Assembly: GCF_964204865.1 (NCBI RefSeq)
Contig: NC_135256.1
Location: forward strand, 11,842,001 to 11,906,000
DNA: 64,000 nucleotides
DNA from: Styela clava
Taxonomy: Eukaryota
Reading direction: 5' to 3'
Positions 32,900 to 42,019 of the stretch are shown here, in pieces. Position 1 is the first letter of the stretch, and every line of letters starts with the position of its first letter. The notes below the pieces were generated by a model, which was given only the letters and a program-made list of their open reading frames with translations, searched no databases and was not told the DNA's origin. The position numbers and the translations under genes are program-made.

Positions 32900-35080
32900 T
32901 ATTTCTATTCACTTCCAAGCATGACTATATTCATCTTAACCATTATCGGAGATAACTTTTTACAATGCCTAATCAAAAGGAGGTCAACTGTGATGTAGCA
33001 ATTGAAATTTGGACAGCTGTTTGAACATCTTGGGACAAAATGGTGACGAATGAGACATATTGCACGCGAAATCTCGCTTCGAATAAGCAATAGAAAATTT
33101 GCAATGAAAAAGTATCACCAGGAAAACATCTAATGATCCATAAGCTAATTTGAACAAAATGGCAAAGTCATTTTAGCTCAAATCTATGTTGCACACCATA
33201 ACTAATAAAACACTAACTAATAACTATAGATAGGTTTAGTATCTAATATGAAATCATCATTTTTTACGTAATAAGTTTTCTTGCACTACACAATAGTTTT
33301 TAAACTTCTAATTCTTGGCTGAATATGATACCAAGATTAGATCATGACTGATTATATGTTTCATCATCTGCCACTAATGCCATTTCATCAAAATTCAATG
33401 CAAATGTTCGCAGAACATTGCAACTGATGGTAAAATCAGAAGCAAGCCCAAGCCTGGTGAAACAATGGTACCGGCATTCGTGGAAGTCACGTATCCTTTC
33501 AGCGACAAAGTCCTGATATTTACCTTCCCATTTTGTAGCTTTTCTACCGCAGTGAGTTTTGCTTTATCTCTTCCTGAAAGATATTGGCTGATTAATTTTC
33601 TACCCTAAATTTAGGTATACCTGAGAGAAGGGTTTATCGAAGTATTTTTCACTCTCCAGCCTGACTATATTTACAATAACCATTATCGAAGACAACGTTT
33701 TACAATCCCTCATCAAAAGGAGGTCAACTGTGACGCAACAGTTAAAATTTAAACAGCTGCTGGAACATTTTGGGACAAAATGGTGACCAGTTGGACAGTT
33801 TGAACGCGAAACTCGCCAAGATACTCTTTGAATGGATGTTTCCCCGATCATCGATTTCTTTGTTTATTTCTGTAACAATGACTAATCAGCAAAAAGTAAA
33901 CGATGACGTAACAAGGGCCATTTTTGCAGCCGCTCAGACACTTCGTTCGCTCAGACAGATATACAAGCATGGTTGTAAATATTGCCTAATTTTCGTGGTT
34001 TTGTGTGTTCTTTGTCAGATTTCAGTTGTGTGTCCAAAAATTAGTTGTAAATGAAGTGATCTAATTGCCCTTATGTCTTACGAGATTTAATTTAGTTGCA
34101 GTGATAGACAAAATAGTCCCAGAAAAGCTGCGATAAACTATGCTATCGCTATCCGTACCTGTCAGCGGTATATCTGGTTGTATATTTTATTAGAAATGAT
34201 GGTTTTGATCAAGTAACTCAGTTTGTGAGTGCCAACTCTCTAAAACACTCGAAGAATAAGCATCCAAAATTTGCAATAGTAAAAGGTGAGTTTTTCTGAG
34301 GTCAAGGGTCGGAGAAACATCCATGAGCAATAAAAATTTCGCAATGACGAACTATCGAGATCAATCACCGGGCAAAAATGTAATCCATCTCTATGAGGTG
34401 AAAAACGTGAAAAATAAAGGGAAGATTTGGATAGTAAATAGTCTGAGTTTCAAAAGATATAGCACGTTTAAACGTACTTTTATATAATTATAGACTAGAT
34501 TTAAATATAACCTAATAACTTTTGAAATGACAACAAACATTTGATAGTTGGTTTTTAATATTCTTTAAAAATGAGGTACAATGATATAGAAAAAAAGGTT
34601 GCAAAGCTAACTTGAACAGAATGGAAAACTCATATAGCTAGAGAGAATCATATAATGAGCAAACTTGGACTAGTAAATCTCTTTCATACATTCGAGATAT
34701 TAGCTCAAATGAAATCATGAATTTTAACGTGATATGTTTTTCTTGCATTACGCAATAGTTTATAAACCACTAATTCATGGCTGATTATGATACCAAGAAT
34801 TAGATCATGACTGATTATATGTTCCATCATCTCTGCCAATAATGCCATTTCATTAAAATTTTAATGCAAATGTTCGAGGAACAATGCAACTGATGGTAAA
34901 ATCAGAATAAAGCCCAAGCCTGGTGCTGCAGTGGTACCGGCATCCGTAAAATATCCGCATCCTTTTGGCGACAAAGTTCCGATATTTATCCTTCCATTTT
35001 GTAGTTTTTCTAACGCAATAGGACATGCTTTGCCTCTTCCTAAAAAAATATTGGCGGATTACTTTTCTACCCTAAATTTA
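32900..35080. repeat. Local tandem duplication covering the last exon, 3'UTR and downstream flank of the SOD-repeat gene
   Basis: ~32900-33060 matches ~33640-33810, and ~33250-33612 matches ~34710-35080. Confidence 0.85.
33395..33573 (-). other. Duplicated copy of the terminal coding exon of the SOD-repeat gene (intact frame)
   Basis: Acceptor CTTTCAG, same phase and same 179-nt length as 35039-34861. Encodes GRDKAKLTAVEKLQNGKVNIRTLSLKGYVTSTNAGTIVSPGLGLLLILPSVAMFCEHLH*. Confidence 0.75.
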
Positions 35081-38000
35081 GATACATCTCGAAGTATTAT
35101 ATATAATTGTAACATATCAGAAAAAATCCGATATCCTAATATCTTTGTTTTTTATATTCGGCTGAATAATAATCCACTCTTGAGAATATATGGACTATTT
35201 TACAATGTGACAGAGAGGATTTTGAACGAAAATAATTTACGAATACGAAAGTAACTGGATCATCAAAAATATGACAATGTTATTAACGACATAGCAAGAC
35301 ACTAATACCACAACATACTTTCATAACCTTGCTAGTTTATAATCAACTAGCAAATAAATTTGAAGATATTATCTTCAACTATATGAATATTTATGCTAAT
35401 GCATTGCAAAAGAAACTTTTACCGAAAACAAGAAACGTCATATTTGTGCATCCTTTAGTTATCATATCCAATCTCTCAGCCGTGTGAATTTTTGATAACG
35501 GTACTCCCAATTCCTTTGACATTATAATTCTTGCATCAACTCTGAAATAATCAATATCTGCTATTTTCGTGCGTTTTTAATATTTATGTGAACGTAAATG
35601 TAAAAGTAGTAATCCAATTTAAAATTTTATTCGAACAAAAAATGAGTAACAAGATTGTATAAAGAGAGAATTTCATTCAACTCACAAATCTTTCAGATTC
35701 AGAAATTCAGGAAACTTCACTGGAATATTTACTATCTGTGCTCTTGTCATTCGCGTGTTCAGAATAATGTTAGCACAAGCCCGCCTAATTTTTGATTTAA
35801 AGCCTCCATGGACGTTGACAGAATGACCAATCACTGAAAAAAACAGAATTTATGTAGTATTATATATATATATATAAAGTTTTGTCCTATATATAAAGTC
35901 AAGCGACAGTGGGAACTGAATCAATGTTTTATTTAATGTATTATGTAACATGGAGGTTTCCGTGGACTCGTTAATGCGCTCTTGGTGCGCTTATAAAATG
36001 TTAGAAACTTTTTAATATAGGCTCTCGATATCACCTGTATAAGGTCCAACTACTGGAAGAAGAGGAACATTATAATATTTGATGACATTTTTTCCAACAC
36101 TTGTCAAAGTTGTCTTCGTACTAATGTCGCCGATCTCGCAATAATCAGGAGTGTTTCCGGAACAATAGGTTGTATAGTTGAGCTAAACATATGAAAAAAT
36201 ACAGAATCAAAAATCCCTTCCGTAAAATACTGAGTTCATATTTGTCAGCTGAAAAACCGTGATAACTGATAAGCATTCACAAAAATGAATACAAATATTT
36301 ATAAAAATTGAATCAAATCATAGTCACAACAGTGGTTATTAAGTCAAACTAAACTACCAAGTTACCCCATAAATACAGAAACTGTATGAAAACCTTCTTT
36401 TTCTATTGTTAAATAATAATGGTACATTACAATTTATTTACTCATAACGTTACAAGGGTGATCTTTATTCGTCGGTTCAGAATTTTGATATACAGCGATG
36501 TTGGAAAAAAATGCGACTAATAGCGATAAAACAGCGTTACCAGAAACAACAAAAAACAATGAACTGAAGATCTAATATCACCTGTTTTGTAATTCCAAAT
36601 GGTGCAAAATGCTTGTTGACAGAAGAACAAGATATGTTTGCTATTGGATCATGCTCAACATGCCACATGTGGTTTATAGTCTGAAATAAAGGGCCCAATA
36701 TGAGCATGATGTGCAAAAGAATGTGACATTTATTTCCTTTCTGTAAAAGTGTTATTTTTTTGATGCATTTTCACAATTTCGTTCCGTGCAGGGATATGAT
36801 ATGACCCCCCCCCCCAAGACTCTCAAACTCTTAAAGGGTCCGCTATCTGGTATGGCCTAACTTAAACCCATGCTACCAAATTTGCCGATTAAATCCTACC
36901 CCGCTCTAGTCACAAACTGTCTGGAATTCGTATTCCGCCATGGATAATTAACGCGTTTTTTATTGATCCCTTTTGTAAGCCCAATAAATATATTCGGGCT
37001 CAGATCGGATTGTACATATTTCTTACGACTGCACAAAAATATTATTCTCAATTCTATTTCTACGCAGCAAATACAAAAATCGAAATACGACTTACTGTGG
37101 TGTCGTTTGCAGGATGCTTCAATCTGACCATCACATTTGTCACTGGAAAACCATCCTGACTTGATGTTACTTTTTGTTTCTGAATAAAACTTTTTTATGT
37201 CAACCCATGTGACGAATGGCGTATGGAACGAATTATTTACCATGCCTTTTATTGGAATAAATTAGGCATAGGTATAGGCCCATTCATCCATCGCCACCTG
37301 GATGAGTTTCCTCCGTAAGGGGGCTGGCATATAGGCCGTGTTCTATCAAAGAATGCAAATAATATCTAAATTATATTAAAAGTAAGGAGGAAAATGATAA
37401 GGTTGATAAACATTACATCCCAGTTTAGTTAACCGTTTCGGTTCATTTGAAATTGGAAGTTCCGCACGCCTTAGTCGTGGAAAGATTTTGAAATTTGTAT
37501 TTTTACACACCATTCTAACAATTCCTTCGTAAACTCCTTTAAATACGGCATCTGCATATATATATTCGTCTTCAACTTCGCTTTCATCTGTTTTTGCTTT
37601 TCCCTCCTTTTTGCCATCTTTAGAGAATAATAGAATACGAATTTCAATTTTCAATAAAGGAAGTATCTAACGCTGAACAAAATTTTTTTCGAAATTTGAT
37701 AGTATTCCCTAAAAGTGTCAGAAAATATTTACATTCCAAAATTTCGTAAAATTACTTTTCTCGAATAAGATGCGATTTCGCAATTGTTGTAGTAAATTAT
37801 AAATTTTGGTATCCATCGAAAATAAATATTGAGTATATATCATGAATACGAGATAAATATAACATTAAAACGTCAAAAAATAGTAAATGCATTGAACAAA
37901 TATTTCGTTGGTACTGGGGAGATACACATTCCTACCATTATTGGCGCATGTCTTTCTAGAATCAGCCTTTTGAAGGATCTGGCCATCTATAGTGCAACCG

Positions 38001-41000
38001 ACTGGAGACAGGGCACCAATGCTTCGCTTTCCATTTTGTAATTGGAGGAGAATTTTTTCGTCATAAGTTCCATAGCCTATAGTAAATGTTAAAAATAGTA
38101 CGTCTGATATTGCTGCAAAATTAATGAAATTATCGATAATATTAGTAAATCGCACGTCTATAAATTTTATACCTCGGACAATAAATCAGTTAGAATACTT
38201 TTCGATTCCGAGTTGCTATATGAAACAAGTTTTCATAAGTTTACCTCTAACTCGTAGATGTAACTCGTTACATCTCGTAGCGCAAGTTCCCAATCGACAT
38301 ACAATGATTAGTTCCTCTTGCCTGTTGTCCAAATGGAGTGGATTGATTCTATGACGTCACAAATGAGTCTACTTTGTCGTATGTACTAACTACGGTATTT
38401 AGTATTAACTTGTCTCATGGTAATCGTTAATTATGTTGTTTATTGTGTTTTTATTTATTTATTTTGACATTCTATACCTAAATAAATTGGAGTACAGTTT
38501 TTATATTTCGTGATACAGTCAAAAATTAGTACAGTTGTGATTTCATATTTCTATTGTATGTAATGATAGTTTGAAATATTAACTCATTATAATAGAATTA
38601 GGGAAAAAAATAATCACCGAAGACGAGAAACTTTATGGTTGTGCAATTGGTTCCTGTATCGTAAAGTCCGCCAGCGGTTTGGATTTTTGAAACTGCGAGT
38701 CCAAGTTCTTCTGCAATTCTTATTCGTGCCTCTCGACTAAAATAAGGAATATTTTTCAATCCAAAAGACATTATGACCAAACAAACGCTTTTGTGACCAA
38801 ATAATAGCCATAAGTAATTCATGACATTACTCATCGCTACGATTAAATCTACTTTAATTAATTTAATTAACTTTAATTAATTATACACTAAAACTTTGTT
38901 GCCGGAATGGAACGCCATAGCTTACAATATTCGGGGTATACGTAATCTGAAACATAATTTGATGTGATGAAAAACTCAATATATATATATGTCAATATAA
39001 CTTTGACTGCCTCATCTTACTTTGGAATACCCACAAAATTTCAAAAATCAATTTTTATTCTAATTAATTTTATGTCCTAACGAGTTAATCTCGTCCGACG
39101 TACTGTATATTTATAAGTTAAAACAGGATTATTACGTAATAAACAAAAACATACACTGTTTTGATGTCCAATACTGGTTGCGATATTTTTACGTTCACTG
39201 AGATGACCCTGGCAGGAGTCATTCTTGTATTTAACGCAATATTCCCACAAGCTTGCCGCACTTTTGATTTGTAGCCTCCGTGTATATTAACAGAATGACC
39301 GATTACTGAAAAAATATGGACGATTATTTGTCTCTTGTGAAAGAATTTGTAGTTAAGCCACACTACCAAATTCTATTGATACTATAAAATAAGTCTTGAG
39401 ATATTTTGATAAATATCGTTTCGTAGAGGAATTGCTCAGTTTTTGAGATGACTTATATATATATATATATGCGGACGAGTAAGACAGTGATGTTACATTC
39501 TATATGAGAGTTGCGCGACACTGAAAGTTGTAACCATGGTAAATGTACGGTTGTCGTACATTTTATTTATTTACATTTTTTTGATACGTACCCGTCCATG
39601 GACCGACGACTGGCAGCATTGGCACATTGTACCAGTTGACGACATCTTTTCCAATACTTGTCAAAGTAGTTTTAGTGCTTATATCGCCAATCTCGCAATA
39701 GTCTGGGGAAACACCGGAACAATAGGTTGTATAATTGGGCTAAAATTTGTGAAAATAAAATTATATATTTTGTGTATATTTTTCTTTATAGTAATAGTAG
39801 CGATAGTAATAAGAATCTCTTTGATTGTTTATTTGTCACCCTGCGACCAATGCAGACCCTTTTGCGGATGGTCCCATCAGCATTGATGCATCTGAAGGTT
39901 AGGACAAAGGGCATGATGGTGTGGCAAGCTTATTACGGTATGCGAAAATTCCTGGTCGGTTAATCTCTTCCTGACACTGATTTGTTACCGATATGCTTAA
40001 GGCATTTACATCAACTTCTTTTTTCCAAGGAAATGAATTTCAGACATGACGAAGTGAATAAGCATAATAGAAATTGTACACCATCCGTACACACCTGCTT
40101 TGTGATACCGAAAGGAGCGAAATGTTTGTTAACAGCATCACAATCTACTCCTGTTATTGGATCATGTTCAACATGCCACATGTGATTTGGAGTCTGGGAA
40201 AGAAATGAAATATTTTTAGGCTGTACCGTATTTTGCCTTCAGCTTAAGAACGCCATTTATTTATAAATATTAATATATAATTCTCTAATTCAAATCTCAG
40301 AGCTGTAAAAACAATCCTTCTCGACTTATTTAAAAATTGAAACCAAATATGCCTTCTGGGTTTTCGAATAATTTTTTAATAGTTGTAAACTTTATTTTTT
40401 TTGGTACGAAATCGAGACTTCAATAATAGCTGGTTAGGAGTTGAGAAAAATATATCATCATTTATATACCTATTTTGAGCTGCCACACAGATAGATTTTT
40501 AGTTACTTCATTCGATTATGGTTTGAAGATATGGTTATATATTAGATAGGATATTCTACATGGCTATATATCAAAAAACTGACTTACTTAATCGGTAATA
40601 ACACAAACCTAGAGTTATTAGAGTGCACATGACCCAATACGATATATTTAAAACAGCGATCAGGTTTTGTCTGAAGTTTCGGAGAAACATGCAAGTTGCA
40701 GTGCAATAAAAGACTTCAACATAAGCAATTAGTCTACAATTAAATATAGTAATATCACAATAAATATTTTTTGTTTTACCGAAGAATCATTTGCTCTGTG
40801 TTTGACTCGAACCATCACTGTTGTGGTTGGAGCTCCACTGTCATCGTCACTAACACGTTGAATCTGAAAATACATTCTCCTACACATTATGGCATTTCTT
40901 TAAAGAGCACGGACACTTGCATTACGATTTCGTCTCAAGTATTTACTAATGGAACTTTCACGCTTGTCTCTATCGTGCTGAGAGGGAGCCAGTTACAATA

Positions 41001-42019
41001 TAAAATCGAAGCTCAACACATATATAGAACTTTTTAAATATATATATAACAATATTCTTAAACGCATACCATTCGTACTATTCCAACATAGACTCCTCGA
41101 AAAACTGCATCCGCCACAACAACATCTTCACCAAATTGTTCAACATTGTCTAATTCAAAATCTGTCGCGCCTCCCATCATTGCCCCTGGAAAGAGTTTGA
41201 GTTTTATTGCCAAAATGTTGCAAATAAAATCCGGCAATTCTTTAATTAAGCCAGATACGGCAAGTATTGAAGGGCGTACACAAGATTAGTTTATCATACC
41301 AACAATCATACGCAAAGTAATTAATTCGGGTTAATCAAGTTAACATTTTCGTATCGTTGATGTTTAGTGCCAGCGAACTTAATTGCCAAACAACTATTGA
41401 TTATCCTTTATCCTCACAGTGATGTCGTTCGTTTAACAGTCGTCAGTATGGTACATTGATGACTGCAACCGTTTGTCATTAATAGGGATGAATACAAAAA
41501 TGATCACTATTCGAACAAAACAATATATCTACCAATATCCCAAGCTAAAACTACTACTAATATTAATATCGATACAAACTTAATTTACAGTAATTTCTAA
41601 TAATATTTAACTGCGTACGCAAAAGCAAGTGAAGAAATTTACCAGTTTTTTTTATATGTCGGCGGTGTTACGCTGGGATAATTATGTGCGAAACGATTGC
41701 TGGAGTCCTCGCCGCTGTAGGGTGGTGGTTCACGTAACCGCTGGTCGGTTACGGCTTCCTCCACCATCAAGTCCATGCATCTGAAACAAATAAATGGCTA
41801 ACTAACCCCATACCCGACATGAACTGGTAACCGGACGAGAGCCCGTGGTTCACCGTATGCTTATGTCGTCTTATCAGCTTCCCTCTTCCTCGGGATAAAT
41901 ATGTAAATCTCCTCTTTATGAACATTGTGTCTAATATCAACGTAATGTACTTTTTTCATACCTGCTAAGCTTCGAGCACACAAGACAATGCACACAAATT
42001 GAATCCATCTGTACCTCAT
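34861..42019 (-). CDS. Secreted, probably GPI-anchored Cu-only-SOD-repeat-like (CSRP-related) protein with two SOD-fold units, 15 exons, 599 aa
   Basis: Exons (-) 42019-41962, 41185-41070, 40863-40780, 40193-40095, 39739-39592, 39305-39155, 38736-38618, 38076-37936, 37617-37511, 37179-37096, 36680-36582, 36182-36035, 35833-35686, 35541-35423 and 35039-34861. All are GT-AG and in phase (1800 nt). Signal peptide MRYRWIQFVCIVLCARSLA. Each unit reads ADAVFxGVYxGIVRM..NHMWHVEHDP..C..VNKHFAPFG..YCEIGDISTK..LPVVGP..VIGHSVN[IV]HGG..RxAC[GA]NI. Hydrophobic C-terminal tail. Confidence 0.88.
41676..41910 (+). mobile_element. SINE-like interspersed repeat in intron 1 of the SOD-repeat gene
   Basis: Related copies at 17295, 20730, 23195, 50898 and 58680. 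No TIRs; shared 3' end GATAAATATG(T)AAATC. Confidence 0.7.

What the first reader, a model, noticed from the sequence alone, without database searches (positions are those of the whole stretch)
34861..42019. Hidden 599-aa surface protein with two Cu-only-SOD folds in which the copper motif HxH is rewired to H-V-E-H
Seen: 15 small exons splice into signal peptide + 2x SOD-like domain + hydrophobic tail. Established: Cu-only SODs (fungal SOD5 type and animal CSRP repeats) lack the Zn site and electrostatic loop, carry CE-x-GD, and bind Cu with four His including an HxH pair. Both repeats here keep the first His (WH), the KHF His, the SVN[IV]H His, CEIGD, the R-x-A-C arginine and the short His-to-Arg spacing. 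However, the usual WHVHE reads WHVEH in both repeats, with different Glu codons (GAA/GAG), which suggests the Glu is under selection. Inference: a 3-His/1-Glu (or shifted-His) site may bind another metal (Fe, Mn, Zn, possibly V in an ascidian) or have a non-dismutase function. This is the best candidate for an undescribed system in the window.
Basis: partly seen in the sequence, partly recalled or inferred. Interest (0 to 1): 0.85.

Follow-up and report, generated by a model that had tools for sequence, protein, structure and literature searches.

The report
Sea-squirt SOD-like protein, altered copper site
This is an already annotated but uncharacterised gene of the sea squirt Styela clava for a probable cell-surface protein with two copper-only-SOD-like domains, in both of which one of the four copper-holding histidines is replaced by glutamate; it is a real, conserved and unusual variant of a known family, and its chemistry is still untested.

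Summary
The minus strand carries a cleanly spliced gene. My 16-exon model (42019..33395) translates exactly to RefSeq XP_039251375.2, "uncharacterized protein LOC120328880 isoform X2" of Styela clava (633 aa), so the gene is annotated, not hidden.

Both SOD-like domains are real:
- A CSRP-repeat HMM built without this family scores them at 95-100 bits.
- AlphaFold2 models match Candida SOD5 best (Z 15.7; TM 0.65-0.69).

Gapless alignments to SOD1 and to canonical CSRP repeats put Glu at the second copper-ligand position (SOD1 His48), followed by His. The other three His, the E/D pair, the Arg and the disulfide are all kept.

Among 500 CSRP repeats outside the family, none has this state. Of these, 380 keep all four His; nearly all the rest have lost several ligands together.

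The two cassettes are anciently duplicated (synonymous sites saturated, dN/dS about 0.1). A third copy, in a 300-aa homologue from another organism, also has the motif.

Function is inferred only. I favour a retained but chemically altered metal site. A copper-free pseudo-enzyme (CCS domain II precedent) is the main rival. No RNA-read or metal-geometry test could be run. Verdict: new variant of a known kind, moderate interest.

The parts
41962..42019 (-). Exon 1: start codon and signal peptide (aa 1-20)
   Evidence: AF2 shows an N-terminal helix at 5-19.
41070..41185 (-). Exon 2: cassette 1, first beta strands of SOD-like barrel 1
40780..40863 (-). Exon 3: cassette 1
40095..40193 (-). Exon 4: cassette 1. 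Carries N-H-M-W-H-V-E-H-D-P (His93 40175-40173, Glu95 40169-40167, His96 40166-40164), disulfide Cys104 and the bridging-His equivalent His110.
39592..39739 (-). Exon 5: cassette 1. Carries C-E-I-G-D (Glu135, Asp138, the E110/D113 signature of Cu-only SODs).
39155..39305 (-). Exon 6: cassette 1. Carries S-V-N-I-H (His177), Arg185 and Cys188, then the start of the accessory domain.
38618..38736 (-). Exon 7: cassette 1 accessory alpha/beta domain (helix plus two strands)
37936..38076 (-). Exon 8: end of accessory domain 1
37511..37617 (-). Exon 9: Lys/Glu-rich disordered linker, then the start of SOD-like barrel 2
   Evidence: pLDDT is under 50 at aa 287-321.
37096..37179 (-). Exon 10: cassette 2
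36582..36680 (-). Exon 11: cassette 2. Second N-H-M-W-H-V-E-H-D-P (His376 36662-36660, Glu378 36656-36654, His379 36653-36651).
36035..36182 (-). Exon 12: cassette 2, C-E-I-G-D (Glu418, Asp421)
35686..35833 (-). Exon 13: cassette 2. Carries S-V-N-V-H (His460), Arg468 and Cys471. Its donor GT overlaps the in-frame stop.
35423..35541 (-). Exon 14: cassette 2 accessory domain
34938..35039 (-). Exon 15 as spliced in RefSeq isoform X2.
33395..33573 (-).

Best explanation
SHOWN (confidence about 0.95):
- The locus is Styela clava LOC120328880.
- It encodes a signal peptide, two copies of a cassette and a hydrophobic GPI-type tail. Each cassette is a B-type CSRP/Cu-only-SOD-like beta-barrel of about 160 aa followed by a beta-alpha-beta-beta-alpha domain of about 80 aa.
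- The cassette duplication is ancient and both copies are under strong purifying selection.
- In both barrels, and in a third copy in another organism, the residue at the second Cu-ligand position (SOD1 His48, SOD5 His77) is Glu, followed by His.
- Every other element of the Cu-only SOD active site is kept: three His, Glu110/Asp113, the catalytic Arg, the disulfide, no Zn ligands and a short loop VII.

INFERRED (the mechanism I commit to):
- The site is still a working metal site, not a relic.
- Glu95/Glu378 lies in the same beta-strand register as His93/His376, so it faces the metal. This gives a 3-His + carboxylate centre, most simply for Cu taken up outside the cell.
- A carboxylate ligand would favour Cu(II) and lower the redox potential. 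I therefore expect an extracellular, membrane-tethered protein whose dismutase activity is altered, probably much reduced, and which acts as a metal-binding or redox module distinct from the canonical CSRP that Styela also has.
For: Identity:
- The 16-exon model equals XP_039251375.2 exactly.

SOD/CSRP kinship:
- The exon-5 HMMER search finds multi-repeat Sod_Cu proteins next after the family.
- BLAST to a teleost cusr gives 8e-19.
- A CSRP-repeat HMM built without the family scores 95.2 and 100.5 bits.
- AF2 plus Foldseek and VIA put SOD5 at the top: E 1e-6, TM 0.65-0.69, Z 15.7.
- All 30 Atlas feature hits carry Sod_Cu.

Ligand assignment:
- Gapless alignments put W-H-V-E-H against F-H-V-H-Q and F-H-I-H-E of solved SODs, and against W-H-I-H-V of cusr.
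- DSSP places W-H-V-E in one strand and the following His in coil.

Not decay:
- Of 500 repeats outside the family, 380 keep all four His and nearly all the rest have lost several ligands, usually with the Arg as well. Position 48 is His in 380 of 380 repeats that keep the other three His.
- The family keeps all 11 other signature residues in 3 of 3 distinct domains.
- R1 versus R2: pS 0.71 (saturated), pN 0.185, dN/dS about 0.09.
- Invariant columns are enriched within 3 residues of the site: 35/44 against 66/119, Fisher p 0.006.
- The tree shows a long stem (2.26) and short tips (0.11-0.30), the pattern of change followed by constraint.
- The same genome keeps a canonical CSRP with normal H-x-H repeats.
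Against: - No metal, activity or expression data exist.
- I could not read model coordinates, so the side-chain direction of Glu versus His is inferred from strand register only.
- Published precedents go the other way. Human CCS domain II keeps three Cu His plus an Asp and binds no Cu until D200H is introduced (PMC13017621, section 5). SOD1 H48Q is reported to lose Cu binding and activity (PMC4881462).
- CCS domain II also shows that a SOD-like site can stay conserved without binding Cu.
- The repeat census is dominated by closely related teleost proteins.
- AF2 confidence is moderate (mean pLDDT 65-70) and the alignment is shallow (18-19 rows).
Confidence: 0.45

Rival explanations
1. Copper-free pseudo-enzyme. 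Loss of the His48-equivalent abolishes Cu binding. The barrels then serve as structural, recognition or chaperone-like extracellular modules, as in CCS domain II, oyster dominin, the Cu-less N-terminal CSRP repeats, and arthropod and tardigrade CSRPs.
For: - CCS domain II with 3 His + Asp binds no Cu (PMC13017621, section 5).
- SOD1 H48Q loses Cu and activity (PMC4881462).
- Cu-less CSRP repeats and whole Cu-less CSRPs are expressed and fold normally (PMC13017621, sections 8-9).
- Styela has a separate canonical CSRP that could cover SOD activity.
Against: - Known Cu-less CSRP repeats in my census lose several ligands and usually the Arg as well. Here all other site residues, including Arg and Glu110/Asp113, are invariant in three domains that are 67-72% identical.
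- Conservation is concentrated around the site.
Confidence: 0.3
2. Ordinary Cu-only SOD with a shifted ligand. His96/His379, at the start of loop IV, swings in as the fourth His. Glu becomes a second-sphere or solvent residue, and the domains are normal 4-His Cu sites with SOD activity.
For: - The His immediately follows the strand end and lies in coil, so it has some freedom.
- The Glu-His pair is invariant together.
- All other catalytic elements are intact.
Against: - An i+3 residue normally faces the other side of a strand.
- The W...P spacing is identical to canonical repeats, so there is no register shift.
- None of 380 intact repeats uses this solution.
Confidence: 0.2
3. Annotation or assembly artefact, or a decaying pseudogene.
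For: - No read-level RNA evidence was obtained.
- Pfam Sod_Cu does not reach its threshold.
Against: - 16 exons with intact splice sites and open frame.
- dN/dS about 0.1 between the cassettes.
- Two assemblies or alleles differ at 18 positions plus a 6-residue splice difference, and none of these touches the site.
- A 300-aa homologue is encoded without interruption on a 1557-nt Logan contig, which is most simply a transcript.
Confidence: 0.03

Closest known systems
[quoted passage not shown]
   Same: - The barrel type is the same. It belongs to the 'N-H-x-W-H' B-type repeat with an extra Cys pair.
- E110/D113 signature, no Zn site, short loop VII and the disulfide are all present.
- Signal peptide and GPI-type tail are present.
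- There is weak positional similarity between the accessory domain and the tail that follows the last repeat of fish cusr.
   Different: - Only two SOD-like domains instead of 4-12.
- The domains are separated by about 125 aa (an extra alpha/beta domain plus a disordered linker) instead of linkers of 5-9 aa.
- The second Cu His is Glu in every domain.
- A very long stem branch.
- Pfam Sod_Cu is below threshold.
- The CSRP listed for Styela clava in the 2026 review is another gene, LOC120336197.
Candida albicans SOD5 (fungal Cu-only SOD; PDB 4n3t)
   Same: - Best structural match for both models.
- Extracellular and GPI-anchored.
- Glu110/Asp113, no Zn, truncated electrostatic loop.
   Different: - SOD5 is a single domain with four His (H75, H77, H93, H153). 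Here the H77 equivalent is Glu.
- Sequence identity is 22-24%.
Human CCS domain II
   Same: A SOD-fold domain that keeps three of the four Cu His and has a carboxylate (Asp200) in place of the fourth. It is conserved although it is not a dismutase (PMC13017621).
   Different: - The replaced ligand is the His120 equivalent, not His48.
- CCS keeps the Zn site and loop VII.
- CCS is intracellular and docks to SOD1.
- CCS is not a close relative of this protein.
SOD1 His48 mutants (H48Q ALS variant; yeast H48Q, H48C and H48F structures 1f1a, 1b4t, 1jk9)
   Same: Substitution at exactly the same ligand position. These structures appear among the fold matches.
   Different: They are disease or laboratory mutants with impaired Cu binding. 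They are not naturally fixed, have no adjacent compensating His and keep the Zn site.
Oyster dominin and Cu-less CSRP repeats (arthropods, tardigrades, N-terminal repeats, last repeat of fish cusr)
   Same: Extracellular SOD-fold domains without a canonical Cu site.
   Different: They have lost most or all ligands, and usually the Arg. This family has lost only one ligand.

Membership tests
Cu/Zn-SOD superfamily fold | Eight-stranded Greek-key beta-barrel matching solved SODs | tested here: met
   - AF2 of P0002 and P0012.
- Foldseek: SOD5 E 1e-6, TM 0.65-0.69.
- VIA Z 15.7 to 4n3t, and 14 chains with Z of 8 or more in the representative set; the fourteen top rows, Z 10.1 to 15.7, are all SODs, SOD-like proteins or CCS.
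Pfam Sod_Cu (PF00080) | Score at or above the gathering threshold (28.9 bits) | tested here: not met
   - 18.7 bits, E 0.0025, for P0002.
- No hit for the near-identical isoform X1 (P0001; P0012 itself, the window's product, was not scanned) or for single exons.
CSRP-type Cu-only SOD repeat | Significant match to a profile of CSRP repeats built without the query family | tested here: met
   35 repeats from six CSRPs give 95.2 and 100.5 bits for the two domains and 103 bits for P0002.
Cu-only SOD / CSRP | Four His Cu ligands (SOD1 H46, H48, H63, H120) | tested here: not met
   The H48 position is Glu in both domains and in P0002.
Cu-only SOD / CSRP | Glu110/Asp113 signature in place of the Zn ligands, no Zn His, and a truncated loop VII (short His-to-Arg spacing) | tested here: met
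   - C-E-I-G-D is present.
- There is no His between the bridging His and this motif.
- His177 to Arg185 is 8 residues.
Cu-only SOD / CSRP | Conserved intramolecular disulfide (C57-C146 equivalents) and catalytic Arg | tested here: met
   Cys104/Cys188 and Cys387/Cys471, with Arg185/Arg468. These are invariant columns. The disulfide bond itself was not tested.
CSRP | 4-12 tandem SOD-like repeats joined by linkers of 5-9 residues | tested here: not met
   There are two SOD-like domains (aa 36-197 and 319-481), separated by an alpha/beta domain and a disordered stretch.
Cu-only SOD / CSRP | Extracellular location: signal peptide plus GPI anchor or secretion | tested here: inconclusive
   - An N-terminal hydrophobic helix and a C-terminal hydrophobic helix at 614-632 after small residues (N-A-G).
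- Seven N-x-S/T sequons.
- No signal-peptide or GPI predictor was available.
Cu-only SOD / CSRP | Binds Cu and disproportionates superoxide | not testable with these tools
   Needs protein chemistry.
SEA / ferredoxin-like juxtamembrane domain (accessory domain) | beta-alpha-beta-beta-alpha-beta sandwich matching solved SEA domains well above background | tested here: inconclusive
   - VIA Z 5.2-5.5 to MUC16 SEA, the Gpr126 region, IA-2, ACT-like domains and ribosomal S6, which is within the background range.
- No Pfam or Atlas hit.
- hhalign to the fish cusr tail: P 0.003, probability 11%.

The most novel reading that the evidence does not exclude
The family carries a naturally selected 3-His + 1-Glu (or His-shifted) metal centre in the Cu-only SOD fold that is catalytically competent. 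It would have different chemistry from dismutation at diffusion-limited rates: a different redox potential, a different substrate, or a metal other than Cu. That would make it a new functional class of SOD-fold metalloprotein, found so far only in Styela clava and in one unidentified organism.
Probability: 0.25. Interest if true: 0.75.

Novelty: new variant of a known kind. Interest (0 to 1): 0.55.

Why it matters
CSRPs are a recently recognised and poorly understood family of extracellular SOD-like proteins. What is known so far is that oyster CSRP has SOD activity and frog CSRP is needed for tail regeneration. An open question in that field is whether repeats without a canonical Cu site do anything.

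In my sample, repeats were nearly always either fully intact or broadly degenerate. This Styela family is a third state: exactly one ligand changed to a carboxylate, a His placed next to it, and everything else held fixed by selection in three domain lineages. It amounts to a natural experiment on the His48 position. In SOD1 that position is an ALS mutation site, and in CCS a His-to-Asp change at another ligand marks the difference between chaperone and enzyme.

A small, expressible single domain (about 160 aa) would show whether the SOD fold can host a 3-His/1-carboxylate centre and what that does to metal choice and redox chemistry. If the domain turns out to be metal-free, the find is simply one more pseudo-SOD, with an unusual two-cassette architecture.

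Tried and rejected
- **Single exons against Pfam and PDB.** Pfam gave no hits. The W-H-V-E-H exon alone against PDB sequences gave only chance hits. Exons are too short, so this is not evidence against SOD kinship.
- **Read laying.** They lie in the intron between exons 7 and 8. The whole window was read only inside local scripts.
- **The look-up of sequencing runs.** Nine runs guessed to be RNA, from three studies, hold 7-11% of the words of 39100-41300. That share is of the order of the exon content but does not prove expression.
- **The search for homologous proteins.** P0002 found only itself. P0001 found only itself and one teleost cusr. The family is narrow in these databases, but absence from other tunicates cannot be claimed.
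- **Accessory domain.**
  - No Pfam hit and no Atlas hit.
  - An HMM of 99 fish cusr tails does not hit it.
  - hhalign is weak.
  - tblastn finds no such tail at the canonical Styela CSRP locus.
  - I therefore give its homology to the cusr tail only as a tentative lead.
- **The 'H-x-H-H' intermediate idea.** His at position 49 occurs only in an A-type fish repeat, so I dropped it.
- **Vanadium or another metal.** Nothing here tests it.
- **Joined splice model.** I did not type it or send it to any search or fold tool. It was built only inside scripts, to check the frame and compare it with database proteins. After it proved identical to P0012, that database record was used instead.
- **Complex prediction.** Not used, because no protein-protein claim is made.
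Full report
**1. What is in the sequence**

Three-frame translation of the minus strand between 42300 and 34500 shows a series of short open segments. They recur twice and carry W-H-V-E-H, K-H-F-A-P, C-E-I-G-D and S-V-N-[IV]-H-G-G. Every candidate exon is bounded by a polypyrimidine-AG acceptor and a GT donor. Homologous exons of the two copies use homologous splice positions and the same phases.

An HMMER pass over 1.84 billion representative proteins, using the 49-aa exon that carries C-E-I-G-D (by reference), returned two family members:
- P0001, 639 aa, 90% identical.
- P0002, 300 aa, 75% identical.

Cluster look-up names P0001 and its relatives as "uncharacterized protein LOC120328880" isoforms X1 and X2 of Styela clava.

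My 16-exon model (42019..33395) translates to exactly the 633 residues of P0012, which is XP_039251375.2. The window is Styela clava contig C8:11842001-11906000. So the gene is real and already annotated, but uncharacterised.

Exon 15 and exon 16, with their flanks, are 83% identical over 387 nt. This is a recent duplication of the terminal exon, and both copies end in the same kind of hydrophobic tail. The 599-aa end therefore remains possible as an alternative.

The joined model was never typed or sent to a search or fold tool. It was built only inside scripts, and the identical database record P0012 was used from then on.

**2. Is it an SOD-like protein?**

Single exons are too short for Pfam or PDB searches. 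Pfam Sod_Cu stays below threshold even for whole proteins: 18.7 bits for P0002 and nothing for P0001. All other tests agree that it is SOD-like:
- phmmer of P0002 against PDB sequences finds only Cu/Zn SODs, at E about 3e-3.
- After the family itself and one low-complexity protein (P0003), the next hits of the exon search include proteins with 4-10 Sod_Cu repeats. These include the mussel Sinanodonta woodiana and the 12-repeat Capsaspora protein.
- P0001 aligns over 81% of its length with a teleost cusr/CSRP, at 8e-19.
- A profile of 35 CSRP repeats built without any Styela-family sequence scores the two domains of the window's protein at 95.2 and 100.5 bits.
- AlphaFold2 models were made for P0002 (mean pLDDT 69.6) and for the window's protein P0012 (64.7, with barrels mostly 75-89). 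They show two eight-stranded barrels at aa 41-193 and 324-476.
- Foldseek ranks Candida albicans SOD5, the prototype Cu-only SOD, first for P0002 and fourth to eighth for P0012, after a tethered SOD1 dimer that covers both domains (E 1e-6 to 9e-5, target TM 0.64-0.70). VIA-align gives Z 15.7 to SOD5, and the fourteen top rows, with Z 10.1 to 15.7, are all SOD, SOD-like or CCS chains.
- Language-model look-alikes are all Sod_Cu clusters.

**3. The altered copper site**

Three independent gapless alignments put W-H-V-E-H-D-P opposite the canonical motif:
- F-H-V-H-Q and F-H-I-H-E in solved SOD1s.
- W-H-I-H-V-Y-P in fish cusr.
- The profile consensus w-h-V-h-e-l-p.

The Trp and Pro anchors keep the same spacing, so there is no indel. 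The second Cu ligand (SOD1 His48, SOD5 His77) is Glu, and the next residue is His.

Aligned to the profile, the signature positions read H-H-V-E-H-C-H-E-D-H-R-C in both domains of both Styela alleles and in P0002. The positions are H43, H46, x47, H48, x49, C57, H63, E110, D113, H120, R143 and C146.

The 500 repeats outside the family are mostly teleost, with mussel, Capsaspora and two unnamed proteins added. Their states were:
- 380 keep all four His.
- Nearly all the others have lost several ligands, usually with the Arg.
- One is H-H-H-Q.
- None has Glu at position 48.
- Position 48 is His in 380 of 380 repeats that keep the other three His.

A degenerate DNA pattern for W-H-V-E-H-D-P occurs only at these two places in the 377-Mb genome.

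The same genome has a canonical multi-repeat CSRP at C2:6.013-6.024 Mb, with G-Y-H-V-H, N-W-H-V-H-V-Y-P and G-Y-H-I-H-E. It is probably LOC120336197, the Styela entry in Table S1 of Peterson and Culotta 2026. That identification is inferred and was not checked by sequence.

**4. Selection and history**

- Between the two cassettes, synonymous sites are saturated (pS 0.71-0.78). pN is 0.185 in the SOD domain, giving dN/dS of about 0.09. pN is 0.40 in the accessory part.
- The three distinct SOD-like domains (R1, R2, P0002) are 67-72% identical to one another and roughly equidistant.
- Invariant columns are enriched within three residues of the site residues: 35/44 against 66/119, Fisher p 0.006. 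Columns are not independent.
- In a quick maximum-likelihood tree of 42 repeats, CSRP repeats split into two types (SH-aLRT 99). The family is a clade (100) inside the 'N-H-x-W-H' type, on a very long stem (2.26) with short tips of 0.11-0.30. The careful tree search did not finish.
- The two Styela alleles or assemblies differ at 18 positions plus a 6-residue splice difference, and none is at the site.
- P0002 is not encoded in the Styela clava genome.

**5. The rest of the protein**

- Each barrel is followed by a beta-alpha-beta-beta-alpha unit of about 80 aa, at aa 201-272 and 484-554.
- Its best structural matches are at Z of about 5: MUC16 SEA, the SEA region of Gpr126, the IA-2 ectodomain, an ACT-like domain and ribosomal S6. 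That is a ferredoxin-like or SEA-like arrangement at background level.
- BLAST extends the colinear alignment into the tail that follows the last repeat of fish cusr. However, a fish-tail HMM does not hit the domain and hhalign gives only P 0.003 with probability 11%. A derivation of the cassette from 'last CSRP repeat plus tail' is therefore a lead, not a result.
- Other features: an N-terminal hydrophobic helix, a Lys/Glu-rich disordered linker (aa 287-321), seven N-glycosylation sequons, and a C-terminal hydrophobic helix after N-A-G...S-P-G. These fit a secreted, GPI-anchored protein like SOD5 and the CSRPs. This is inspection only.

**6. How it most likely works**

Shown: the fold, the kinship, the single-ligand substitution and the constraint on it.

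Inferred:
- DSSP puts W-H-V-E in one strand and the following His in coil. Alternate strand residues face the same side, so Glu95/Glu378 should point where His48 points in SOD1. That would give a 3-His + carboxylate site.
- I favour a retained, chemically altered metal site (0.45).
- The main rival is a copper-free pseudo-enzyme (0.30), and it has real precedent. Human CCS domain II keeps three Cu His plus Asp200 and binds no Cu until D200H is introduced (PMC13017621). SOD1 H48Q is reported to lose Cu binding and activity (PMC4881462).
- A shifted-His, otherwise normal Cu-only SOD is the third reading (0.20).
- An artefact or pseudogene is very unlikely (0.03).

**7. What could not be done**

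- The runs guessed to be RNA hold 7-11% of the words of a 2.2-kb stretch whose exons make up about 20% of the words. This is suggestive only.
- Model coordinates cannot be read with these tools, so the Glu-versus-His geometry was not measured.
- No paper in the searchable library mentions this locus. The CSRP papers I read do not describe a Glu at this ligand position.

**8. Verdict**

The finding is real and well delimited, but it is not hidden, and its size and 3' end need correction. It is a new variant of a known kind: a CSRP-derived, two-cassette surface protein with a conserved His-to-Glu change at one copper ligand. Interest is moderate (0.55). It would be higher if the site proves to be a working 3-His/1-carboxylate centre. 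The scan's note s1-817712, on the 7-exon cassette duplication on this same stretch, agrees with what I found.

Noticed in passing
window 35100-34600 and 33640-33140 (minus strand): The terminal exon and its flanks are duplicated (83% identity over 387 nt). Exon 15 still carries its own hydrophobic tail and stop. RefSeq splices from an internal donor (34938 for X2; a GC donor about 18 nt further on for X1) to exon 16. Alternative 3' ends are therefore possible.
   Followed up: partly
G000:C2:6013440-6023816 (loci L010, L011): A canonical multi-repeat CSRP gene of Styela clava with normal H-x-H motifs (G-Y-H-V-H, N-W-H-V-H-V-Y-P, G-Y-H-I-H-E) and C-E-L-G-D / Y-E-[IV]-G-D. It is probably LOC120336197, listed in Table S1 of PMC13017621.
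   Followed up: partly
G000:C1:19866611-19869318, G000:C14:20671389-20672235 and G000:C2:12375934-12376074: Other Sod_Cu loci in the genome. There are two neighbouring genes on C1 (one apparently intronless), one on C14 with an in-frame TAG or intron inside the match, and a weak hit on C2.
   Followed up: no
CSRP proteins P0004, P0008-P0010, P0014, P0110: CSRP repeats fall into two types that tend to alternate along the proteins, separated by a branch with SH-aLRT 99. One type has G-Y-H-V-H. The other has N-H-x-W-H-V-H and an extra Cys pair. This suggests a two-repeat unit of amplification. In teleost cusr the last repeat has lost all Cu ligands and the Arg.
   Followed up: partly
Nothing was examined there, and no letters of it were sent to search tools afterwards.
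   Followed up: no
protein P0003: A 592-aa low-complexity tandem-repeat protein scored E 1e-15 against the C-E-I-G-D exon through nine repeated short matches (..I-N-C-G-D-I-I-N..). I take this for a compositional false positive.
   Followed up: no
protein P0002: The single-cassette homologue ends in a Gly-rich stretch without a hydrophobic tail. It may be secreted rather than anchored, or the 1557-nt contig may be incomplete.
   Followed up: no
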